Shown here: one piece after another, positions 7,671 to 63,270 of the stretch
Layout of the letters: each line of letters begins with the position of its first letter
How positions within the stretch are numbered: position 1 is the first letter of the stretch
DNA from: Octopus sinensis
Taxonomy: Eukaryota
Assembly (NCBI RefSeq): GCF_006345805.1
Contig: NC_042998.1
Location: forward strand, 169,074,001-169,138,000
Direction of reading: 5' to 3'
DNA: 64,000 nucleotides
Translations under genes and position numbers: made by a program
Notes under the pieces: generated by a model
Databases searched by the model: none
What the model was told of the DNA's origin: nothing
The model's input: the letters and a program-made list of their open reading frames with translations, nothing else

Positions 7671-7710
7671 CACGCGCCTTCACCTCGTGTGTGTGTGTGT
7701 GTGCGCGCGC

Positions 7711-7842
7711 GTGTAATAAGAATAATAAGGAGTAAAAGGGGTTAATAAATCCAGGTAGATATCTATAAAACAGTCATTGTTGAACGAATTTGGTTAACTA
7801 TAGCTAAAATCCAGATATCATTAAATACATACATACGCGTGT

Positions 7843-7917
<75 letters not shown>

Positions 7918-8043
7918 GTAATAAGAATAATAAGAAGTAAAAGGGGGTTAATAAATCCAGGTAGATATCTATAAAACAGTCATTGTTGAACGAATTTGGT
8001 TAACTATAGCTAAAAACCAGATATCATTAAATACATACATACG
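7711..8043. repeat. Local tandem duplication of a ~127-bp unit between (TG)n tracts
   Basis: 7711-7837 and 7916-8043 match with about 3 differences. Confidence 0.9.
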
Positions 8044-8090
8044 TGTGTGTGTGTGTGTGTGTGTGTGTATGCATGTGTATATGTGTGTGC

Positions 8091-8152
<62 letters not shown>

Positions 8153-12781: not shown

Positions 12782-13250
12782 CATACATCAATGTTAGTTA
12801 ACTGTTAGTTTATTTATAAAATCCTCTTAAAAATCAAAATGCATATTTTTTATAAATTTAATAATTTTGGGGCAGAATATGAATCTCTAATGTTCAAAGT
12901 ATATAAATCCAAAACCGTTTCGACAAAACACGTAACAGAAATGCTTGAGTAAGGATTAAGAAAATCCCTGCTAAAGAGGATAATTGCATTCTTCTTTAGC
13001 AAGATAATTTCTGCAGAAAATAATAACTTTATCACTGTTGCAGTTATTTTTAATTTATATGTTGCACGCATTGTAATACAAAAAAGAATAATTAACTGGA
13101 TATATGTTTGTGTATGTATGTGAACAGGAGAGAGAGAAAAGTGAAGGAAACGGGAAAGCTATATGGACAAAATTAGCTTTTGAAAGCTAATGTGTCGAAA
13201 TTTATTAATGAAGTTGCTAGACAAATAAAAAAGCAAGCTATGTTCTTTTC

Positions 13251-13396
13251 TACTCTAGGCACAAGGCCCAGAATTTCGGGGGAGGGGAGGCCAGTCGATT
13301 AGATCGACCACAGTATGCAACTGGTACTTAATTTATCGACCCTGTAAGGACGAAAGGCGGAATTTGAACTCAGAACGTAAAGACAGGCGAAATACC
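13251..13396 (-). mobile_element. SINE family A, head-less body with tail type B
   Basis: Minus strand ggtatttcgcctgtctttacgttctgagttcaaattccgcc...ggccttgtgcctagagtagaaaag. Confidence 0.8.
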
Positions 13397-15035
13397 GATT
13401 TCAACATAGAAGGTACGTGCATAATATCGGGGAACTAAAATTATAAAAAGGAGGCATAAAGAAAGAAGCAAAATTAGAAGAAACGAATGAATCATGAAAA
13501 AGATAATATAATGAGGCGGTTGCCCACTCGACCCCCGAAGTCGAGTGGTTACATTGAAACCGTTTTACCGTTCAATCACACCTATCTAAAATTCAGCAGT
13601 TCAATACCGTAGTCATGTTTTAGTTCGATATAACAGGTCTGTTTTGGCAATTGCTCTCTTTCCACGATCATCGTCCACAACTCAGTACCCTTATCAACAT
13701 TTTTATTTACTATCTCCATTTGTGCCTTATTTAACAATGGGCATATAATAGGATCACCATCTACATCGAAGAATTCCACTTCGACCACATCCTTCCACTC
13801 GCTCACCAGGTTTACAACTTCATCCTCCGCGTCCGCATACAAAACGCAAGCAAAACAAACAAGGGGAGAGGGAGCCATATCTACATCATGTGTGTTTGCA
13901 TTTCTTTTCTGTTTTGTTGTTGGAGGGGAATGGGTAGGTTTGGTGTTTACATGGGAAGAGTGTGGTGAAAAGGGAGAGGGAGGGCACTAGGTGGGTTGGG
14001 GTTCACGAGTACTTACTTTCTTTTTCTTTTTTTTTCTTTTCCCAGCTATTTCCCATTCCCTATCTTCTAATACAGGAGTTTTTCTTTCTACTTCTTCTAT
14101 CCTCTCCTGTGGTGGTGGCTGTAGCCCTTCTACCATTTTGGGTGGTGGACGGCTGTTCACTCTTATGTGGCCTTTCCGGCCACATTTAAAGCAGCGAGGA
14201 ATCCGGTCCTCCACCCACACTTTCAGGATCAAATCCCCAATCCACAGGTTCTCGGGAAGCACTTCGAGGACCTCCACCTCAGCTTGGACGGTAATTTCGA
14301 TGATTTGTCCCTTCCATGTTGCTTCTTCCATCACTTCCGTTTGAATTACCTTCACCTCTTTTTCTCTTTCAATAAAGAGAGCCGCCACCACCCAAGCCGC
14401 ATCGATTTCAGGGGGAATCCCATCCACTTTGAATTTGGCAATTCTCTTGCCCATGTAAGACGGCAAGAGGACTACCTTTTCCGTTTTTAAGACTTTGGCA
14501 GCGTGGGCTATCGCTCTTTCCTCTGTTTTATAATGAACAATAATCGTCCCGAACTTGCTACCTCTGGCCAAATAGGTAATATCGGGCCAGACTGTCATCA
14601 GCGCCTTGTCTATCTCTTTTCCCTAAATGTGGTCGACTCTCTTTTTCTCAACTGAGTAAACTTTGTAAGTTACCATCTTCTTTTGGATTTCCTCCATCCT
14701 TGTCTGCGGTGGGGACAACATCACGTCGTTCCCCACCTTTACAGCCATTCTACTGTCTCTTTCCATATTTGCCAGGTTTATTTTCTTCATTCTCATCTCG
14801 ATTGCCTCTGCAAAACTTTTCTTTTCCAGACATGCGTCCAACATCTTTACTGTCTTAATCAGTTCTTCCTCCGAAGCGGACAACTCAGTTTCGCTTAGGT
14901 CCGAATATACACGACTTCCACCTGCCATCTCTCAGTACTGCCGAGAGACAGCACAACAACTCAAAAACCGCTGCAAACGCAGCACAAAGAACTACAGACC
15001 AAACAAACAAGCTCGTACAACTCACAGAGATGATA
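13397..15035 (-). mobile_element. ORF1-only (gag-like) non-LTR retroelement, L1/Tx1-like
   Basis: 5' leader, one long reading frame with a zinc knuckle, 3'UTR stem-loop and T-rich tail; no APE or RT. The 5' boundary is approximate. Confidence 0.6.
13582..14928 (-). pseudogene. ORF1p/gag-like protein (~448 codons, two in-frame TAG stops)
   Basis: ORF-track pieces 14623-14928, 13987-14598 and 13582-13878 lie in one frame and the linkers translate openly (GKEIDKAL; CPPSPFSPHSSHV...). Degenerate CCHC knuckle RCFKCGRKGHIRVNS followed by a Lys-rich stretch. Confidence 0.7.
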
Positions 15036-23142: not shown

Positions 23143-23975
23143 ATGCACAGATTCACACACACACACATGCACATACGCACACACAAATACTCGTTCACAT
23201 ACACATACACACACAAATACTTTCTCATGCACACCCAAATACTCTCACACACACTCACACGCACATACACACGCAAATGCACGCTCATACACATACAACA
23301 CGAACGCACACACGCACACACATACGCACACACACACACGCACGCACACATGCATATACACACACACAAATACTCATTCACACACACACACACACACACA
23401 AATACTATCTCACGCACACACAAATATTCTCACACACACTCACACGCACATACACACGCAAACGCACGCGCATACACATACAACACGAACGCACACACGC
23501 ACACACATACGCACACATACGCACGCACACATGCATATACACACACACAAATACTCATTCACATACACACTTACAAATACTATCTCCCGCACGCACAAAT
23601 ACTCTCACACACACACTCACACCCACATACACACGCACGCGCACACACATACAGCACGCACACACACACACGCATACACACATGCACACACTCACACAAA
23701 TACTCATTCACATACACACACACACAAATACTCTCTCACGCACACACACATACTCTCACACACACACACTCACACCCACATACACACGCACGCGCACACA
23801 CATACAGCACGCACACACACACACGCATACACACATGCACACACACACAAATACTCATTCACATACACACACACACAAATACTCTCTCACGCACACACAA
23901 ATACTCTCACACACACACACATACACACTCACACATACACACACTCACACACACATGCACACACACACACACACT
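23143..23975. repeat. Higher-order CA-rich minisatellite
   Basis: Recurrent cacacacaaatactcattcacatacac...caaatactctcac blocks with ~125-190-bp periods; source of the spurious 352-aa ORF. Confidence 0.85.
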
Positions 23976-28190: not shown

Positions 28191-28703
28191 TCTATATATA
28201 TAAAACTGTAGTTGTGTGAGTGTCTGTCCCCTTCGATTTAGATTCCTAACTACTCCCACATTTTGCGGTGCAGTTTAACCAAATTCGGGTATCTTATAGT
28301 CGTGATTCATATCGAGCCCGTCTGAGTATTAGCGCGCGTCTACGATGAGTCTACGATTTTAAAAATAATTTAACATCATTTTTTATTCCATTTTAATGCA
28401 TAATTTTTCGTGTGTCGATGGCGGCGGAGTTGGCGTCCATGGTCACACCTGCACCTGTTTGCTTCTCCCCCTTCTTCCCTCCCTCGTGAAGCTGTGGGGA
28501 AAGGAGTGTAAGGAAATCAACGTCGTAAAGCGTTGTCAAGGAGACCAGCGTTCTTTTAGAATAACGACTTCATGGCTTGAAGACACCAAAACAGAAATGG
28601 CTAAGAAAGCCCGAATTGGCATCTATAAGGGAAGTAACTCTCTAAAAATGCTTATATGGTTATTTCCCTTACAAACCCGAGCAACGCCGGACGATACTGC
28701 TAG
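28191..28703 (+). mobile_element. Non-autonomous Helitron, family 2
   Basis: A|TCtatatata start, cccgagcaacgccgg hairpin, CTAG|T end; near-identical to 47914-48420. Confidence 0.85.
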
Positions 28704-28906
28704 TTTAATATAAACCGCGAAACAAGCAATAAAACACTGCTTATAAAAATTAGCAGTATCAAGAACAACAACTGCCCAGCTAAAATCCAACTCGCAATAA
28801 TAATCACAATTAACATACCCACACTTTGACATGGAACAATTGTCCTCGTCAAACTTTTATTGAAAATCGTCAATAGAGAAAGAAACGAAAAATAAAAATG
28901 CATACC

Positions 28907-29454
28907 GATTTCTTTACGACCCACAAGGGGCTAAACACAGAGAGGACAAACAAGGACAGACAAACGATTAAGTCGATTATATCGGCCCCAGTGCGTAACT
29001 GGTAATTATTTAATCGACCCCGAAAAGATGAAGGGCAAAGTCGACCTCGGCAGAATTTGAACTCAGAACGCAGCGGCAGACGAAATACATATTTCTTTAC
29101 AACCCACAGGGGGCTAAACACAGAGAGGACAAACAAGGACAGACAAATGGATTAAGTCGATTATATCGACCCCAGTGCGTAAATGGTACTTAATTTATCG
29201 ACCCCGAAAGGATGAAGGGCAAAGTCGACCTCGGCAGAATTTGAACTCAGAACGCAGCGGCAGACGAAATACATATTTCTTAACAACCCACAGGGGGCTA
29301 AACACAGAGAGGACAAACAAGGACAGACAAATGGATTAAGTCGATTATATCGACCCAAGTGCGTAAATGGTACTTAATTTATCGACCCCGAAAGGATGAA
29401 GGAGTCGACCTCGGCGGAATTTGAACTCAGAACGTTACGGCAGACGAAATACGG
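28907..29454 (-). mobile_element. Head-to-tail trimer of the head-less SINE-A unit (tail A)
   Basis: Units of 183, 184 and 181 bp; flanked by 21-bp TSD 28886-28906 / 29455-29475. Confidence 0.9.
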
Positions 29455-29739
29455 CGAAAAATAAAAATACATACCTTCGACATGTGGTAAAGATGTGCCT
29501 AAAAGAGCAGATGATTTCTAAGGACGAATTGTTGCAGTTAGCTTAGTTAGGTAGATGTGTGCACTACAAAAAAAAAGGCTAACAAACACTTTTGGGTGCA
29601 CAAGGAAAAAATATAAAGATTGGCTGGCAGACAGAGAAGTAATGCTCACTAACCTCATTTAGCCAATACTCTTGCACGATTTATTTAGTTCCCTTCCTTA
29701 TAGTAAGTATCTAAAAAGTAATATCTAAAGCTAACAAAA

Positions 29740-29970
29740 GGCGGCGAGCTGGCAGAAACGTTAGCACGCCGGGCGAAATGCGTAGCTATATTTCGTCTGC
29801 CGTTACGTTCCGAGTTCAAATTCCGCCGAGGTCGACTTTGCCTTTCATCCTTTCGGGGTCGATAAATTAACAACCAGTTACGCACTAGGATCGATGTAAT
29901 CGACTTAATCTGTTTATCTGTCCTTGTTTGTCCCCTCTGTGTTTAGCCCCTTGTGGGCAGTAAAGAAATA
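29740..29970 (+). mobile_element. SINE family A, full head with tail A
   Basis: ggcggcgagctggcagaaacg...gtttagccccttgtgggcagtaaagaaata. Confidence 0.9.
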
Positions 29971-31876
29971 TATCTAATGCCACAACCAATAACTAAAAAG
30001 TGTTGAACTCTGAAACAATCACAGATTTACTCCCCAAATATGCAGAGCCTGAAGCGATCTCTACCCTCACCAAATATGTACAAATACTCGTACAAACACT
30101 GCTAAATACCCAACATTTTGAAACCAGATAACATCATCAAATTTGTAAAGTCAAGACAACTCAATTAAACTAGCGTCTATTTTTAAGCTATACCTGCACA
30201 ACCCTCCCACACTTCCTCAGAACATACAGGCTAAAGTGCAAATAGCATTACACACATCAAAGAAGTTGTATAATTAATCTTCGTTTTCGTCAATGATTTA
30301 GGAAGAAAGTAGCGTCATCTCCCTTCTTACCTATATCGCCAGAGAACATCACTTACCTTAACACTCACAAACATAAACTTAGCACATACACACAGAATAC
30401 AAAATTACAACAAATTATATACAACACCTTCACTTCATTCACACAAAAGAATGCAAAACTTCACACAAACATTCTATGAACATTTGTGCAACAGAAATGC
30501 TTAGCGAAATGCTTAGCGGTACTTCGTCTGCCGCTACGTTCTGAGTTCAAGGGTTAGGGTTAGGGGGAGGTTTAGGGTTATTTACAGGATGTTGTCTCAG
30601 TTTTAGACGCAGCAAATGATTTTAGCTCAAAAGAGAGCATAGGATTGGTTAAAATTCGAAAAATTAAACTACGTTAAACAAACAAATTACAATTTTCTCA
30701 AGAAACAAGAGATAAAAATGTTTTATTTTGACACATTCTACCAGTATACGAAGTTTTAAAGTGTTTAGTTAACTAGAAATTGTCTGCCGTTCAAAAGGAA
30801 AAGATCTCGGCATTATATAAAAAAAAACAATATAGTTTCACTGAAAAGACGAACATTCCAAAGGTTATCCTCTCTCATCACTATTTCTCTGACTGAAGAT
30901 AGCTCTTTTAACCAATATGATAAACCAAAGTGGACTCGGACGCTAGTGTAATCGGAGAACAAGCAGCAACATTTTGCATCTGATAATAAAGAAACGACGA
31001 ATGGTCGGATAATCAGAGTAAAAGAAATTTAGTAAAGTTGGTGTAAAATTTAGGAAACATTTTAGTAAAATTGATAAAGTACACAAAACTAAGAGTGCCC
31101 AAGAGTGTGAAGAAACAGCAGAATAGAACCAATAACAGCAGAAGCACCGGACTCAAATCTTGAAAAGCTTCCATATTTCTTTAAATAATTCTAGATAAAA
31201 ATTAAAACCAACTCTACATAAAAATTTACATTGCTCAAAACTGCTTATATTAATTTGAAATACGTTCTCTCTGAAGACCTCAGAATTGATAGAAAGAGAT
31301 ATTATTTCCATTTTCCAGTCGTCAACACCTACATTGTATATGCAAATGATAAGCATCTCATCAATTTGTTTTTTCTAGCGTCACAAGTTGTAAACAGTCT
31401 TTCTGAAAATTTATAAAATCACACGTTTGTAAATAACGTGATTTTCATCTTTTTTAATATTCTTTATCCAAATTTTTTTTTTATTAAATATTGAATAATT
31501 TTCCATAATTGTCACAACATTATTTACAAGTGTCCACGCGGTGTCTTCGAAAAGTGTATACGTTCAAATATTAATTTAAATATTGAATTATTTTTGTTGT
31601 GAAATCCTTCCTCGAGAAAAGGGCTGGGGTTTTGTTAGATGGAATATGTAATGAATTGCAATTACCAATTTGGAGACTACCATCTAACAAGAAGCCTTGC
31701 TGTATTTACTTACAGCTCAGGAGGTTCTGTGTTCAAATCCTGTCGTGGTTAATATTTTGCCTTTCATTTTTTTCTTAGAGTCAATAAAATGAATTAACAG
31801 TCAAGTACTGGTATGAATTTAATCTACTAATTCTTTCCCCACCTCAGATTTCTAGCCTACTGGCTATGTAAGAAAA

Positions 31877-31968: not shown

Positions 31969-32345
31969 AGACGGTAAGGTGGCAGAATCGTTAGCATACC
32001 AGGCAAAATTTAGTGGTATTTCGTCTGCCGTTACGTTCTGAGTTCAAATTCCGCCTAGGTCGACTTTGCCTTTCATCCTTTCGGGGTCGATAAATTAAGT
32101 ACCAGTTACGCACTGGGGCCGATATAATCGATTTACTCCGTTTTACTGTCCTTGTTTGTCCTCTCTGTGTTTAGCCCCTCGTGGGTAGTAAGGAAATAGG
32201 TATTTCGTCTGTCGGGGTCGATTTTGCCTTTCATCCTTTCGGGATCGATAAATTAAGTACTTGTTACGTACTGGGGTCGATGTAATCGACTGATCCCCTC
32301 CCCCAAAACTTCAGCCTTGTGCTTTTAGGGGAAAGGATTATTATT
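31969..32345 (+). mobile_element. SINE-A dimer (head-core-tailA + core-tailB) between (ATT)n tracts
   Basis: Junction gaaata|ggtatttcg at 32198/32199. Same layout at 38933-39330 (-); similar at 62925-63270 (-). A monomer lies at 32503-32740. Confidence 0.85.
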
Positions 32346-33337: not shown

Positions 33338-33640
33338 GCCTTTCATTGTTTATAATCTGTACCTGTTTTTTCGTTACGAAATAAGCTACACAAATCATGT
33401 TTTTGAATTATATGTATTTACTTTATATACGTATATGAGTTGAAAACTTTCTTTTAACGTTTCACTTAACGTCTATGTTCCATGCTGGCATGGGTTGGAG
33501 AGTTATTACTGTAGAAAGTTGGTATCTTAGCTACTAGTAGTTGAGACCTGCGTAATCTTGACGGCTTTTTTAAATTTCATTATTCTCTTTTACCTGGGCA
33601 AAGCCGTGTATTTCTGCCTGTGTCTTTTATTCTTTTCCTT

Positions 33641-33740
33641 NNNNNNNNNNNNNNNNNNNNNNNNNNNNNNNNNNNNNNNNNNNNNNNNNNNNNNNNNNNN
33701 NNNNNNNNNNNNNNNNNNNNNNNNNNNNNNNNNNNNNNNN
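33641..33740. other. Assembly gap (100 N)
   Basis: N run. Confidence 1.
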
Positions 33741-36715: not shown

Positions 36716-38932
36716 CGTCGTATACACACACATACACATACACACATCTATATGTATGTGTGCGTTTGTGTCTGCATTTGTCCTCTATTACTACTTGACA
36801 ACCGGTGTTGGTGTGTTTAGGCTCAAGTAAATCGGCAAAAGAGATTAATAGAATAAGTTCCAGGCTCAATAAAGACATTGGGGTCGATTCGTTCGACTAA
36901 AAATGTTTCAAGGTGGACCCCACGCATGGCCGCAGTCTAATCAATGAAATGAATAAAAAATAAAAATCCTTTTGCTTTCGTTAAATCAATATCTGTCTGA
37001 GCTAAAATGAAACGGCTTTCGCCAGGTATCGAAACCTGCTCGGAAAATTGACGTTCCATATTACTGCTTGATCTATACTGTTGCCACTAGATTTTTCATG
37101 ATCAGGGATAATAAGGAAAAGCTTAAGGAGTGTTGGAAATTAAACTATCGAGTTTTGAATCATGGCTACATATCCGCTACAAACGTTTTTTTTTTTTTTG
37201 TTTTTTTTTTCACATGTCATGGTGCATCGAGCTGCCTGAAAAAGGAATCGTATATTCTGAAAATATATGCATTAAACTGATGCCTTATCTTGAGAATGAG
37301 AATCAACCGTCGTTTACTTCATGCTGCTAAATCCTGGGATGAGAAGAGACCATATGAAACGTCTGTTGCTCCTGGTAACAACTCTCTTTTTATCATTCTC
37401 ATCAATGTCAAATGGTGCATAAATAACGTTAAGTGTTGCATAAAGATGATGCACAAAACATTTATAGAATTGCTCAAAATAAATTATACTTATTTCCAGC
37501 TTATCAAGTATAAAAAATTCACATTGACAGAAACAAATATTTGGTGAGGGAAAAATACCGCAAACGGTCTTAATTTACTTTCCAATTAAGTGTATAAAAA
37601 TATATATATACTCTCTAGCAGAAAAACATAATTAAATGCAAATTTTAATTTTCTGCAGGAAAAAATACTCAGTTTTATATTTTTATAATATTTTTTATTA
37701 TCTAACACTTCACTAACAACCAGCTGTCTCTTGAGTTCCAATTTTAAAATAGTGAAAAAAAAAATTATCTCGTACGCTTTTTAAATCAACATCCGCCAAT
37801 GGGATTCAAAGAAAATAATGGCTATATATAGTTAAAAGATTTTTTTTACATTCGGCACATGACCAACATCTTAAGCATATGGGGGACGAGATGCGAGTCA
37901 ATTGAATCTACCCCCTGGTGGATTTGACGTCGGTAATAATTGCACTCAATCCTTTTTGCTTTTCCATTGTAGCTTGTAATAATAGACGCATTTTTAATAT
38001 TGATTTCTAACATTGGCACCAAGCCACAACTCTTTTGTGGAGAAGGTTTAATCGACTGAATCGAACATAATACCTGACTGGAGATTATTTTATCGAACCT
38101 GGAATGATGAATGTAAAGTCAACTACTGCTGTGTTTGGATTCAAAACATTGTACATAAAAAATGCTAACTCAGTCATACTACAAAAATTTAATTTGACAC
38201 TCAAGTGTTTATTCCATCTACTGCTTACCTATAGTATATAGAGAGCCAACAATAATGGTTTCAAATTTTAGCACAGTGCCAGCAATTTTTGAGGTGAGTG
38301 GAAATAATCGATTGCATCAACCCCAGTACTCAACTGGTACTTATTCTATCGATCCCAAAAGCATAAAAAAAAACGAAGCCAACTTGGATGGAATTTGAAC
38401 TCAGAACGTAAAGACGGATGAAATGCTGGTAAGTATATTGCCTGATGTGCTAACGATTCTGCCAGCTCGCCGCCTTGAAACTATGGTGGAATGAAGAATA
38501 AAGCATAATGCTCACAGTAAGACCACACATATTAAAAATGGCATTAAGGCAATTAAGCGTTCTAAGATATTCACAAAACAATGACATATTTTGATTAGGT
38601 AACCAGTGGCCATGCTGAGGTACCGCCTTCATGGAAATTTAGTCGAATAAATCGCCCCCAGTACTTACTATTTTAAAATCTGTTAATTATTCTGAGTCTC
38701 TTCTTAACAGCTACTTTAAGGAATATAAAAGAAAAATCATGACCACAGTCTAATGACTGAAATTAATCAAAGGATAAAAGGATGCACGCATATACACACA
38801 CAACGGACATTCACACAGTTTCCGGTCTATGTTTATCGGCCGCGCAGTGGAATTGAACCTGAAACTATGTAGTTGCAATGCGAGCTACTTAAGCACACAG
38901 CCGTGCCTGCGCCTAATAAGACATAAATATTC

Positions 38933-39330
38933 TTTTCTACTGTAGACACAAGGCCCGAAATTTGGGGGGAGGCGGGGCCAGTCGATTAAATCGACCTAGT
39001 ACGCAACTGTTACTTAATTTATCGACTCCGAAATGATGAAAGGCAAAGTCGACCTCGGCGGAATTTGAACTCAGAACGTAGCGGCAGACGAAATACCTAT
39101 TTCTTTACTACCCACAAGGGGCTAAACACAGAGAGGACAAACAAGGACAGACAAATGGATAATTAAGTCGATTACATCGACCCCAGTGCGTAACTGGTAC
39201 TTATTTAATCGACCCCGAAAGATGAAAGGCAAAGTCGACCTCGTCGGAATTTGAACTCAGAACGTAACGGCAAACGAAATACCACTAAGCATCTCGCCCG
39301 GCTTGCTAACGTTTCTGCCAGCTCGCCGCC
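38933..39330 (-). mobile_element. SINE-A dimer (head-core-tailA + core-tailB)
   Basis: Junction gaaata|ggtatttcg at 39098/39097. Confidence 0.88.
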
Positions 39331-40699
39331 TTATAATACATAAATATTAATATAGTGTGAAATGCTTTTACTAAGCCACTCGTGTTGACAGAATGAAGCA
39401 AGGAAACAGTAAATCAAAACAAGATCTCGTGAAAACAAATTTCATCAATGAATAAGAATATCTTGTGAGTAAAATGACACTTAATCAGTTTCGAAATACT
39501 ACATAAATGTTATTAATAGTATATGACTATTGACAAGATACCACTACGGCTTCCTGATCCATACGTTATGAATGCCATCTCGACTTTGAATATCTGTGCA
39601 GAGCATTCAGCTCTACAACCATCAGTCTTATTCGATAAATTGCACAAGCGGACTTGGTGACAAACAACAGATCTAACTAGATTTCTATCTTCGTTAGTCT
39701 GTAATTTCAATACTGAATAGTTTGAATTATCAAAATAATTCTAACTATAGAGTTTATATTCATATAGAAATTATGTGGAGGTAGAGTATGCAATAAAAAC
39801 CAAGGTCATCAGCTATAACATTCTGTCTGATCTTTCACCTCTAATGACGAAAGAAGCTCGGCTTTGGGAAATCAAGGACGCTAGTCCGAGTAATACTCAT
39901 AGTGAAAAAGGTGTTTGCATGGAAAGTTCTGGACGGTATGGCCAGTTTAACCTTATCGACATATCAAACATCAGTCTCTTCTCTACAACTACACCATGAC
40001 TGTAAATGTTGAAGCCATATAGTAGTCGAAACTATTGGCAGAATAATAGTAATCTTTTCTACTACAGATACAAATCCTCAAGATTTGGAGAGGGCGCTAA
40101 TTTCTTACATCGACATCAGTGCTCGACTGGTATTTATTTCATCGACTCCAAAAGGATGAAGGACAAAGTCGATTCGGCGGAATTTGAACTCAGAATGTAA
40201 TGATGGACGAATTTCAGCAATGCATTTTGCCCGGCATGCTAACGAGTCTACCTGTTTACTGTCTTAATAATAGCAATAACAACGGTTTCAAATTTTGGCA
40301 CAAGGCCAGCAATTTCGGGAAGGGGATAAGTGATTACATCGGCCCCAATACTCAACTGGTACTTAATTTATTGACCTTGAAAAGATGAACGGCAAAGTCA
40401 ACCAACCTCGGCAGAATTTGAACTCAGAACGCAAAGACTGACGAAATGCAGATATTGAAATCTCGACCTCGAATGAATGAAAGGCAAAGACATATGTGGC
40501 ATTTGAACTCGAAACGTATAGCCAGAAGAAATGCCGAATGAAGAAGAAGAAGAAGAAGAAGAAGAAGGATGTGGGAGTGCCATGACAGTAGTATGTTAAA
40601 TGGTCAACTGTCCGCTGTGGATGGTAGTAGTAATTGTTGAATTCCTGTTCTGAGGATACATACATACATATACCTTGAGGTGGAAAATCTACTACCATA

Positions 40700-50612: not shown

Positions 50613-51009
50613 TGTACATTATTTACATTCGACGGATATTTTTCATCTTGTTTGTTGTTAACACAACATTTCGGTTGAATGTACCCTCCAGCCTTCTTCA
50701 GGTGTCTTGGGGAAATTTCGAACCTGGGTTCTCATTCTTAAGATATTTTTCGATGTTATTATCATTATTATCTAGGTCACTGCCTGGAATCGAACTCGGA
50801 ATCTTGGGGTTAGTAGCCCGCGCTCGTAACCACTACACCATGACCTGGATAATAATAATAATAACATCGAAAAATACCTTAGGAATGAGAACCCAGGTTC
50901 GAAATTTCCCCAAGACACCTGAAGAAGTCTGGAGGGTATATCAGCCGAAACGTTGTGATAACAACAAAAAAGATGAGGATAAATATCCGTCGAATGTAAA
51001 TAACGTACA
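50613..51009. mobile_element. tRNA-headed hammerhead-bearing element in an inverted (palindromic) arrangement
   Basis: Arms 50613-50779 / 50841-51009; spacer is a tRNA-like head (A box TGGTGTAGTGG, B box GTTCGATTCC, minus strand); hammerhead motif in each arm. Confidence 0.8.
50915..50958 (+). ncRNA. Minimal hammerhead ribozyme (palindromic ACGU stem III)
   Basis: acac CTGAAGA [a-gtctg..tcagcc] GAAACGT T gtga; mirror copy on the minus strand at 50661-50705. Confidence 0.65.
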
Positions 51010-62057: not shown

Positions 62058-62925
62058 ATTATAAAATCAGGTAGTAATTTTCCCTTATACTTAGTGCGAG
62101 TTTTGAAGAGTGCAGTTCGATTTTAATAGTTATTTTTTCAAAACTATAATGGAAATGACAAAGGAGCGTATTCAGCATATTTTGCATTATGAGTTCAATA
62201 AAGGCCACAGTACACCCGAAGGTGCGAGGAATATTAATGCAGTATATGGGGATCGGACAATAAGTGTACGCCAATATCAACGGTGGTTCCAGAAATCCCG
62301 AGTTGGAAACTACAGCCTAGAAGACGAGCCTCATCTTGGAAGATATGTAGAGCTAGACGAGGATGTCTTGATAACCCTGATGGAACAAAATTCCAGCGTA
62401 ACTATTGAGGAAGTGGCAGAGAAGCTTGGATTTGGTCGTTCAACCATTCATCGACAGCTGCGTGTCATCAGAAAAGTCTGCAAATTGGGTCAATGGGTTC
62501 TTCACAAACTTTCCAAGTCTAGTCGCGTGCAGAGAGTGAATGTGTGTTCTTCTTTGCTGTCATGTCTCACGAATGAACCTTTGGGGGGGGGGACCGAACA
62601 GTGACTGGTGACGATAAATGGGTTCCCTACAAAAATGTCAAGCGCCGAAGACAGTGGGTAGGGAAAAGAGAAACACCAGCACCCCAGGCTAAAGGTCTTC
62701 AACCATGTATGGTGTTGCTATAAGTTTTGGTGGGATATGAAAGGTTTAGTCCACTTTGAACATTTCAACCGAAACCAAACGATAACAAAAGAGATCTACT
62801 GCGAGCATCTTGAGCGGCTTAAGTCAGCGCTAGAAGAAAAACGACCATCTTTGGTTTCAAGACGAAAGGTGTTCTTCTATCCGGCCACATACAGCGAGGA
62901 TGACATTCAAAGGCTGAAGTGGTTT
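62058..62925 (+). mobile_element. Mariner transposase, 5' two-thirds
   Basis: 164-aa ORF 62110-62604 with HTH motifs (RWFQKSR..LEDEP..GR; KLGQWVLHKL), then VTGDDKW and GLVHFE...ITKEIYCEHLERLK; cut by SINE-A at ~62925. Confidence 0.9.
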
Positions 62926-63270
62926 CTTTTCTACTCTAAGCACAAGGCTTGAAAGTTTGGTGGGAAGGGACCAGTTGATTAGATCGACGCCAGTACGCAA
63001 CTGGTACTTAATTTATCGCTCCCGAACGGATGAAAGGCAAAGTCAACCTTGGCGGAATTTGAATTTAGAACATAAAGACAGACGAAATACCTCAAAGCAT
63101 TTCGTTCGGCGTGCTAATGTTTCTTATTTCTTCATTGCCCACAAGGGGCTAAACATAGAGGGGACAAACAAGAACAGGCAAAGGGATTAAGTCGATTGCA
63201 TAACTGGTAAAGGGATTAAGTCGAGTGCGTAACTGGTACTTAATTTATCGACCCCGAAAGGATGAAAGAT
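62925..63270 (-). mobile_element. SINE-A composite (tail A unit joined to tail B unit)
   Basis: Junction gaagaaata|agaaacattagc near 63125. Confidence 0.8.

What the first reader, a model, noticed from the sequence alone, without database searches (positions are those of the whole stretch)
28886..29475. Head-less 183-bp SINE unit inserted as a trimer inside a single 21-bp TSD
Seen: three head-to-tail units that all start at GTATTTCG (lacking the tRNA A-box head present at 29740) and end at GAAAT(A/C). One TSD (cgaaaaataaaaat(g/a)catacc) brackets the whole array. Unit ends are complementary (GUAUUUC...GAAAUA). Inference: a concatemer was reverse-transcribed in one event, either by rolling around a circular RNA or by repeated template jumping, as proposed for retrozymes, although I find no ribozyme in the unit. 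Units 2 and 3 share variants with each other more than with unit 1, so post-insertion duplication may contribute.
Basis: partly seen in the sequence, partly recalled or inferred. Interest (0 to 1): 0.7.

Follow-up and report, generated by a model that had tools for sequence, protein, structure and literature searches.

The report
Headless SINE dimer grown to trimer
Three tandem copies of a short retrotransposon lacking its promoter "head" sit inside one insertion scar in an octopus-like genome. Two copies, from different source elements, most likely arrived joined in a single retrotransposition event, and the third was added later by unequal recombination, so no circular RNA is needed.

Summary
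Window 28907-29452 (minus strand) holds three head-to-tail ~183-bp units. Each is nt 49-231 of a ~231-bp tRNA-like SINE whose full copy lies at 29740-29970. A 21-bp target-site duplication (20/21 identical) brackets the array, and no duplication lies between units.

The trimer was not made in one step. The middle unit is a perfect chimera. Its first 58 columns equal the downstream unit and the rest equals the upstream unit. It has no private change. That is the expected product of one unequal crossover in an ancestral dimer.

The two ancestral units differ at four subfamily-diagnostic sites that unrelated copies share, including one on an Octopus vulgaris chromosome. They therefore came from two source sequences. 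This excludes rolling-circle copying of one circle and simple local duplication. No ribozyme is present.

The same junction (tail ...AAAGAAATA | nt 48/49 GGTATTTCG) recurs in two other composites in the window, which look independent. Six of 13 5'-truncated units start at nt 48-51, the loop/3'-arm boundary of a predicted head hairpin.

Best reading: the reverse transcriptase jumped from nt 48/49 of one SINE RNA to the 3' end of another within one insertion event, and the array later expanded at the DNA level. This is a known kind of event with a position-specific twist. Only 64 kb could be surveyed.

The parts
28886..28906 (.). Target-site duplication, copy next to the 3' end of the element (CGAAAAATAAAAATGCATACC on +)
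   Evidence: 20/21 identical to 29455-29475
28907..29088 (-). Unit u3, the 3'-most unit: headless SINE nt 49-231, subfamily with CCGCTGCG and GATTAAATAA; ancestral unit
29089..29272 (-). Unit u2, the middle unit: chimera. Alignment columns 1-58 are identical to u3 (58/58) and columns 59-184 match u1 (124/126). No private change. Product of unequal crossover
29273..29452 (-). Unit u1, the 5'-most unit: headless SINE nt 49-231, subfamily with CCGT(T>A)ACG and GATAAATTAA, private 4-nt deletion; ancestral unit
29453..29454 (-). Two extra nucleotides (CC in SINE orientation) between the 5' TSD copy and the first unit. They may be untemplated or remnants of head nt 47-48
29455..29475 (.). Target-site duplication, copy next to the 5' end of the element (CGAAAAATAAAAATACATACC on +)
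29740..29970 (+). Full-length monomer of the same SINE (head nt 1-48, core 49-166, tail A 167-231), used as the coordinate reference
38929..39330 (-). Related composite: full-length tail-A unit joined at ...AAAGAAATA|GGTATTTCG to a headless unit with tail B1 (...GTAGAAAAGAAT). One 15-bp TSD (39331-39345 and 38914-38928, 13/15 identical) brackets both units
31970..32340 (+). Related composite: full-length tail-A unit joined at ...AAGGAAATA|GGTATTTCG to a headless unit (with an internal deletion) carrying tail B2 (...GGAAAGGATTATT). It lies in an (ATT)n tract, so the TSD cannot be read
13243..13395 (-). Headless monomer (tail B1) starting at nt 48 (GGTATTTCG). No head or tail-A sequence lies upstream
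40284..40535 (-). Two successive headless units. The first starts at about nt 48 and ends near nt 126. It is joined directly to nt 49 of a headless tail-C unit
62924..63268 (-). Composite with a different donor point: a 5'-truncated tail-A unit whose exact 3' end (...GAAGAAATA) is joined to head nt 15 of a tail-B1 unit

Best explanation
The locus began as a heterodimer of two headless units (nt 49-231) of a tRNA-like, CORE-type octopus SINE with 'tail A'. The dimer was inserted in one target-primed reverse-transcription event. The reverse transcriptase started on one tail-A SINE RNA and copied it up to nt 48/49. It then continued, end to end, on the 3' terminus of a second tail-A SINE RNA from a different subfamily, and again stopped at nt 48/49. 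The cDNA was then joined to the target, which left one 21-bp TSD.

Nt 48/49 is the loop/3'-arm boundary of a predicted hairpin in the SINE head. It is a general hot spot where cDNA synthesis ends in this family. Either the template RNAs are already cut there, or the re-forming hairpin ejects the nascent cDNA.

Later, one unequal homologous crossover (or an equivalent slippage) between the two units added a third, chimeric unit.

Shown: the anatomy, the single TSD, the chimera, the different origin of the two outer units, recurrence of the junction, and the hot spot.
Inferred: template jumping.
Speculative: why the stop falls at nt 48/49.
For: (1) Single TSD, 20/21 identical, with no TSD at the internal junctions.

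(2) Chimera. u2 equals u3 over columns 1-58 (58/58, covering 5 variant events). u2 equals u1 over columns 59-184 (124/126; both differences are private to u1). u2 has no private change. The polarity (5' part of the downstream unit plus 3' part of the upstream unit) is exactly that of an unequal-crossover product. The ordering test gives P = 0.0018.

(3) Different sources. u3 carries C17, G19, T78 and A81 (CCGCTGCG, GATTAAATAA), exactly like the unrelated copy on O. vulgaris chromosome OX597819.1 (L005:10145-10375). u1 carries the alternative states found in 29740 and 31977.

(4) Recurrent junction. The same junction occurs in the composites at 38929-39330 (with its own outer TSD) and 31970-32340. 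These have different B-tail subtypes and different A variants, so they look independent.

(5) Hot spot. By my reading of the maps, 6 of 13 5'-truncated units start at nt 48-51, against 0.29 expected (P about 2e-7). This includes monomers with no head or tail A upstream.

(6) Hairpin. The fold of the full-length RNA puts a 12-bp hairpin at nt 32-43/48-59. Its GAAAU/AUUUC core is kept in 11 copies.

(7) The junction base varies (T in the trimer, G in the heterodimers), and there is an extra CC at the 5' end. Both fit untemplated additions at end-to-end jumps.

(8) Template switching of LINE reverse transcriptases is the accepted route to composite SINEs (PMC4758252).
Against: - Only 64 kb of this genome, one 20-kb O. 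vulgaris locus and one 1.5-kb read-assembly contig could be examined. Independence of the three junction events rests on a few diagnostic sites.
- No RNA data exist. A 5' end at nt 48/49 on an RNA is not shown.
- The hairpin shows little covariation, and its consensus energy is weak (-2.7 kcal/mol).
- A 6-bp AU-rich end complementarity is too weak to prove any docking role.
- The partner LINE and its enzyme are unidentified.
- A pre-existing genomic heterodimer that was transcribed and copied would give the same anatomy at this locus.
Confidence: 0.6

Rival explanations
1. Copy of a multimeric master. A genomic tandem array or dimer of headless tail-A units already existed elsewhere, was transcribed as one RNA, and a two-unit stretch was retrotransposed here. 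The trimer still arose later by unequal crossover.
For: It explains heterogeneous units within one TSD equally well. The TSD begins GGTAT, like the start of a unit, as if the target primer had annealed to a following unit on a longer RNA. Dimeric SINEs that amplify as dimers are well known, and the origin of rodent SINE multimers is stated to be unresolved (PMC8466645, PMC10702118).
Against: Headless units lack the A-box-like part of the promoter. Both ends of the insert would have to fall at unit boundaries. Three composites in 64 kb have three different unit combinations (A1|A2, A|B1, A|B2), which would need three masters. No longer array of this unit exists in the window.
Confidence: 0.22
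2. One-event trimer by repeated template jumping. Three RNAs were copied in succession, with an extra internal switch producing the mosaic middle unit.
For: Single TSD and identical junction sequence at both internal junctions.
Against: It needs two RNA species each used twice, plus one homologous internal switch. u2 would also have to share even the non-diagnostic changes of u1 (T91, C183, T191 in the alignment) and of u3 (T38). One unequal crossover explains all of this, including the absence of private changes in u2.
Confidence: 0.07
3. Monomer insertion followed only by DNA-level tandem duplications.
For: Tandem duplication is common, and the last step here clearly was DNA-level.
Against: The duplicated segment would have to coincide with both element ends to within 1-2 nt. 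A crossover between the TSD copies would leave a TSD between units, and none is seen. u1 and u3 differ at four sites shared with unrelated copies. The same junction joins units with different tails elsewhere, which local duplication cannot produce.
Confidence: 0.05
4. Rolling-circle reverse transcription of a ~183-nt circular RNA (retrozyme-like).
For: Unit size, low G+C, tandem arrangement within a long TSD and complementary unit ends all resemble non-LTR retrozymes (PMC7229834).
Against: No hammerhead or other ribozyme was found: Rfam at gathering score and at E<=10, and the CUGANGA...GAAA scan. The unit RNA is not unusually self-paired (z = -0.17). The outer units come from different subfamilies, and the middle one is a DNA-level recombinant. 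Heterodimers with two different tails share the junction.
Confidence: 0.03
5. Successive independent insertions of one SINE next to or into the tail of another.
For: This is the usual explanation for head-to-tail SINE pairs in mammals (PMC8466645). The TSDs of tail-A insertions tend to start with RGTAT, which resembles nt 48-52 of the SINE.
Against: There is no internal TSD or duplicated tail at the junctions. The outer TSD brackets the whole composite both here and at 38929-39330. An insertion into nt 47/48 of a resident copy would leave that copy's head upstream, and it is absent.
Confidence: 0.03

Closest known systems
Chimeric retrocopies and composite SINEs made by LINE reverse-transcriptase template switching (U6/L1 chimeras, R2 end-to-end template jumping, module exchange in 'jigsaw' SINEs; PMC4758252; the U6/L1 and R2 examples are from my own knowledge)
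   Same: Two RNA-derived parts lie inside one TSD. The upstream part is joined at its exact 3' end and the downstream part is 5'-truncated. The parts come from different sources, and the junction base is variable.
   Different: Here both partners are SINEs of one family. The donor break point is fixed at nt 48/49 in most events rather than scattered, and the product lacks any promoter head.
Dimeric and multimeric SINEs (Alu, Twin, colugo t-SINE trimers, bovine Bov-A2 made of two headless A units; rodent B2/B1/Dip multimers of up to eight units, PMC8466645, PMC10702118; some names are from my own knowledge)
   Same: Head-to-tail SINE units. Bov-A2 in particular is a tandem of units without a tRNA head.
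   Different: Those families amplify from dimeric masters or are of unresolved origin. This locus shows heterogeneous units, and no evidence was obtainable that the dimer itself is an amplifying family.
SINE-derived satellites (squamate sSats, PMC10702118)
   Same: A portion of a SINE becomes the unit of a tandem array, and unequal homologous recombination is invoked for the expansion.
   Different: Only three units are present here. The first duplication step seems to be RNA-mediated, inside one TSD, rather than DNA-mediated.
Non-LTR retrozymes of animals (PMC7229834; bioRxiv 10.64898/2026.07.22.740005)
   Same: 150-450-bp AT-rich tandem units, dimers to multimers, with long TSDs when present.
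   Different: The defining type I hammerhead is absent and the RNA is not highly self-paired. The units are SINE bodies with a B-box-like motif and are not identical to each other.
Penelope-like elements inserting as partial tandems (from my own knowledge)
   Same: Head-to-tail copies with a 5'-truncated upstream copy, produced in one insertion and attributed to template jumping.
   Different: No relation of tail A to a Penelope-like element could be tested. Here every unit is truncated at the same point.

Membership tests
tRNA-derived (CORE-type) SINE | Internal RNA polymerase III promoter (A and B boxes) in a tRNA-related head | tested here: inconclusive
   The sequence of full copies shows an A-box-like TGGCAGAAACG (nt 11-21) and a B-box-like GAGTTCAAATTCC (nt 74-86). 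ARAGORN finds no tRNA, and Rfam finds no tRNA match in 28700-30100 (which holds the array and the full copy) even at E<=10. The three units keep only the B-box-like motif.
tRNA-derived (CORE-type) SINE | Short, non-coding, many dispersed copies with variable-length TSDs | tested here: met
   About 25 copies or fragments in 64 kb. TSDs of 21 bp (trimer), 15 bp (38929-39330) and about 22 bp (L005 copy).
tRNA-derived (CORE-type) SINE | Conserved CORE central domain; 3' tail shared with a partner LINE | not tested
   The resemblance of nt ~95-140 to the CORE domain is recalled from memory. PMC4758252 states that the octopus OR2 SINE is a CORE-SINE. No LINE with tail A was available. Three tail types (A, B, C) share one head and core.
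Non-LTR retrozyme | Type I hammerhead ribozyme in every tandem unit | tested here: not met
   No Rfam family reaches gathering score in the whole window. No ribozyme appears at E<=10 in 28700-30100 on either strand, a search that covers both junctions. No CUGANGA(N4-30)GAAA lies inside 28886-29475.
Non-LTR retrozyme | 150-450-bp low-GC tandem units | tested here: met
   Period 184, three copies.
Non-LTR retrozyme | Highly self-paired RNA that accumulates as a circle | tested here: not met
   Unit fold -39.9 kcal/mol against a shuffle mean of -39.2 (z = -0.17). Circularity itself cannot be tested with these tools.
Composite retrocopy by RT template switching | One TSD around the whole composite and none at the internal junction | tested here: met
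Composite retrocopy by RT template switching | Upstream partner joined at its exact 3' terminus; downstream partner 5'-truncated | tested here: met
   Tail A ends ...AAAGAAATA(T) in the monomers at 29740, 15042 and L005, and at every junction. The downstream unit starts at nt 48/49.
Composite retrocopy by RT template switching | Partners derive from different source sequences | tested here: met
   Four diagnostic sites separate u1 from u3, and each state is shared with unrelated copies.
Tandem expansion by unequal crossover | New unit is a chimera: 5' part of the downstream unit plus 3' part of the upstream unit, with a single breakpoint | tested here: met
   58/58 then 124/126 identity, breakpoint between columns 54 and 63, P = 0.0018.
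Dimeric SINE family amplifying from a dimeric master | Many loci with the same dimer, the same diagnostic variants and different TSDs | not testable with these tools
   Collection scans for the junction and the core found no related DNA; the four genome-contig hits to the junction 20-mer were chance matches in bacterial MAGs. Protein-space searches with a junction-spanning ORF gave only two monomer loci.

The most novel reading that the evidence does not exclude
Octopus CORE-type SINE RNAs are cut, or their cDNA is ejected, at one defined point: the loop/3'-arm boundary of the head hairpin, nt 48/49. The resulting headless molecules are habitually concatenated onto the 3' ends of tail-A SINE RNAs during reverse transcription. 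This would be a position-specific, RNA-level route that repeatedly seeds promoter-less SINE tandems, which unequal crossover can then grow into satellite-like arrays.
Probability: 0.2. Interest if true: 0.55.

Novelty: new variant of a known kind. Interest (0 to 1): 0.35.

Why it matters
How head-to-tail SINE multimers arise is openly stated as unresolved, even for mouse B2 and jerboa Dip. The candidates are insertion into tails, dimeric masters or template switching (PMC8466645). This locus separates the steps cleanly. An RNA-level joining of two different SINE RNAs inside one TSD came first, and a DNA-level unequal crossover followed. It also points to a fixed break point at a hairpin in the SINE head, which could be tested genome-wide in octopus assemblies, where SINEs make up more than 10% of the DNA (PMC13282606). 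It further shows a plausible first step from an interspersed repeat to a tandem repeat. It does not reveal a new class of element, and it gives no support for a ribozyme-free retrozyme.

Tried and rejected
- Ribozyme or tRNA in the unit. Rfam at gathering score (whole window) and at E<=10 (28700-30100), ARAGORN, and a hammerhead-core pattern all found nothing in the array.

- More copies from public DNA. I scanned for the junction 20-mer and a 25-mer of the core. Metagenome contigs gave 0 and 0. Viral contigs gave 0 and 0. Genome contigs, scanned for the junction only, gave 4 chance hits in bacterial MAGs that match only the 20-mer.

- Multimers through protein space. A junction-spanning 88-aa ORF gave one O. 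vulgaris 'hypothetical protein' (a monomer locus, L005) and one 68-aa ORF on a 1.5-kb read-assembly contig (L006, copies with heads). Neither spans a junction.

- Locating the window in a public assembly. Two window ORFs were not on record.

- Microhomology-guided switching. I checked the tail GAAAT against the head GAAAT at nt 36-40, and UAU overlaps. Each predicts a junction different from the one observed, so I rejected them.

- Insertion of a tail-A element into nt 47/48 of a resident SINE. Rejected, because no displaced head lies upstream and the outer TSD brackets the composite.

- An internal polymerase III start from a cryptic A box, and a tRNA-intron splice site at nt 48. The sequence gives no support for either.

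- TATTT at nt 50-54 as a polymerase III terminator for tail-A RNAs. It is suggestive in the light of PMC8466645, but it would also truncate full-length transcripts, so I left it as a note.

- Literature. A search for a 16-nt stretch of the SINE core in papers gave 0 hits.

Full report
1. WHAT IS THERE

Tandem Repeats Finder reports one array at 28908-29452, with period 184, 3.0 copies and 94% matches. Reading both strands shows that the repeated element lies on the minus strand relative to a full-length copy at 29740-29970. A blastn of that full copy against the window finds about 25 copies or fragments. It aligns each of the three units to nt 50-231 of the ~231-nt element (the first base is nt 49 by direct reading).

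A module map divides the family into three parts:
- a head (nt 1-48), with the A-box-like TGGCAGAAACG;
- a core (nt 49-166), beginning GGTATTTCG and containing the B-box-like GAGTTCAAATTCC;
- alternative tails. Tail A ends ...GTAAAGAAATA. Tail B ends either ...GTAGAAAAGAA or ...GTAGAAAGGATTATT. There is also a tail C.

The three units are head-less core-plus-tail-A units.

The 21-bp direct repeat CGAAAAATAAAAAT(G/A)CATACC lies at 28886-28906 and 29455-29475. 20 of 21 bases are identical, with a chance probability of about 7e-11. Two extra bases sit between the repeat and the 5' unit. Nothing resembling the TSD lies at the two internal junctions, which both read ...AAGAAATAT|GTATTTCG.

2. WHOSE GENOME

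No tool names the source of the window. A junction-spanning 88-aa ORF (28870-29136, minus strand) finds a single protein in 5.8 billion, a 'hypothetical predicted protein' of Octopus vulgaris. Its locus on chromosome OX597819.1 (L005) carries a full-length tail-A monomer that is 91% identical to the window copy, with a ~22-bp TSD.

The window is dense in microsatellites and holds a mariner remnant. PMC4758252 lists the octopus OR2 element as a CORE-SINE. The central part of this element looks CORE-like to me, but I did not test that. I therefore call it an octopus-type, tRNA-like, CORE-type SINE, and I treat the species as unproven.

3. THE TRIMER WAS NOT MADE IN ONE STEP

I number the units in SINE orientation: u1 is the 5' unit (29452->29273), u2 the middle unit (29272->29089), and u3 the 3' unit (29088->28907).

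- Over alignment columns 1-58, u2 is identical to u3 (58/58). u1 differs there at five events.
- Over columns 59-184, u2 matches u1 (124/126). u3 differs there at twelve columns.
- The two exceptions are changes private to u1.
- u2 has no private change at all.

The chance that the five informative events favouring u3 are the first five of nineteen is 0.0018.

The polarity matters. An unequal crossover in a dimer a-b gives a-[5' part of b + 3' part of a]-b, which is exactly the arrangement seen. One well-known DNA-level event therefore turns a u1-u3 dimer into the present trimer. A single-event trimer would need two RNA species each used twice, plus an extra internal switch.

4. THE ANCESTRAL DIMER WAS MADE OF TWO DIFFERENT ELEMENTS

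u1 and u3 are 88% identical. In the alignment, four of their differences are not random decay.
- u3 has CCGCTGCG and GATTAAATAA. The unrelated O. vulgaris copy in L005 has exactly these states. The second is also present in the copy at 39330.
- u1 has the alternative states, CCGTTACG (with one private change) and GATAAATTAA. The copies at 29740 and 31977 and most other copies carry these.

Each unit then carries roughly half a dozen changes of its own by my count. That is broadly in line with the 1/21 difference between the TSD copies.

So two distinct source sequences were joined before or during insertion. This excludes rolling-circle copying of one circular monomer. It also excludes duplication of a monomer after insertion.

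5. THE JUNCTION IS RECURRENT AND ITS DONOR SIDE IS A HOT SPOT

Two other composites in the window have the same junction (...A(A/G)GAAATA|GGTATTTCG).
- 38929-39330 (minus strand) is a full-length tail-A unit followed by a headless tail-B unit. One 15-bp TSD brackets both.
- 31970-32340 (plus strand) has the same architecture, inside an (ATT)n tract.

These two carry different B-tail subtypes and different A variants, so they do not look like copies of one dimeric master.

A fourth composite (62924-63268) joins the exact end of tail A to head nt 15 of a tail-B unit. A fifth (40284-40535) joins an internal point of one headless unit to nt 49 of another. There are also headless monomers with no head or tail-A sequence upstream (13243-13395).

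By my reading of the maps, 6 of 13 5'-truncated units start at nt 48-51, where 0.29 would be expected (P about 2e-7). The acceptor side is the exact 3' end of tail A in four of the five composites.

6. WHY NT 48/49

The minimum-energy fold of a full-length copy places a 12-bp hairpin at nt 32-43/48-59 with a 4-nt loop, so the headless unit starts at the first base of the 3' arm. The GAAAU/AUUUC core of that hairpin is kept in all 11 heads aligned. Covariation is slight and the consensus energy is weak.

The end of tail A (GAAAUA) imitates the 5' arm. This is why the unit ends are complementary and why the junction is palindromic.

I considered microhomology-guided switches. Each predicts a junction different from the blunt one observed. 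The variable junction base (T or G) and the extra CC at the 5' end fit end-to-end jumps with untemplated additions.

Two explanations remain, and I cannot separate them:
- SINE RNAs are cut in the hairpin loop, so the enzyme runs off a real 5' end;
- the re-forming hairpin strips the nascent cDNA end once the 3' arm has been copied.

7. NOT A RETROZYME

Animal non-LTR retrozymes are defined by a type I hammerhead in every repeat and by highly self-paired circular RNAs (PMC7229834; bioRxiv 10.64898/2026.07.22.740005). Rfam finds nothing in the window at gathering score, and no ribozyme at E<=10 across the array and its junctions. No CUGANGA...GAAA core lies in the array. The unit folds no better than shuffles (z = -0.17). 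The resemblance is limited to unit size and tandem arrangement.

8. COMPARISON AND VERDICT

Template switching by LINE reverse transcriptases is the standard explanation for composite SINEs (PMC4758252). Head-to-tail SINE multimers are abundant in some rodents, and their origin is left open there (PMC8466645). SINE pieces can also seed satellites by unequal recombination (PMC10702118).

This locus is a clear example that shows both steps in order. Its added feature is a fixed break point and promoter-less units. I rate it a new variant of a known kind, of moderate interest.

The main rival is that a heterodimeric master elsewhere was copied here. I could not exclude it, because no further octopus DNA was reachable: the collection scans and protein-space searches gave nothing useful.

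Noticed in passing
window 50640-50990: Inverted arms of about 120 bp surround a tRNA-like segment lying in reverse (about 50778-50848, with GTAGTGGTTA...GGTTCGATTCC motifs on the minus strand). It looks like a foldback or MITE-like element, or a second tRNA-derived SINE family inside a palindrome. Neither ARAGORN nor Rfam calls it.
   Followed up: partly
window 28886-28906 and L005:10376-10398: The TSDs of tail-A insertions begin with a sequence like the start of a unit: GGTATG at the trimer and AGTATAT at the O. vulgaris monomer, against GGTATTTCG. This could mean target-primer annealing to RNA that extends past tail A into a following unit, or it could reflect endonuclease preference. The copies at 29740 and 15042 do not show it clearly.
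   Followed up: partly
window 63173-63238: A 29-bp x 2.3 tandem duplication lies inside the tail-A unit of the composite at 62924-63268.
   Followed up: no
window 62110-62604 (+): A 164-aa ORF carries the HTH_48 domain of Mos1/mariner transposases (E = 2.7e-15). It is a mariner remnant.
   Followed up: partly
window 13987-14598 (-): A 203-aa ORF with a weak CCHC zinc-knuckle match and a lysine-rich tail looks like a retroelement gag remnant. The exact protein is not on record in public assemblies.
   Followed up: partly
window 7687-8126 and 23154-23927: Two other long-period tandem arrays are present. One is 206 bp x 2.1, flanked by (GT)n. The other is a CA-rich 185 bp x 4.3 array. Both are unrelated to the SINE.
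   Followed up: no
window about 33640-33740: A run of 100 N marks an assembly gap. It shows up as 100 N in the base count and as a stretch of X in an ORF translation.
   Followed up: no
window 38880-38913 (-): Immediately downstream of the 39330 composite, another tRNA-like SINE of a different family begins (GGCGCAGGCACGGCTGTGTGCTTAAG...GGTTCAATTC).
   Followed up: no
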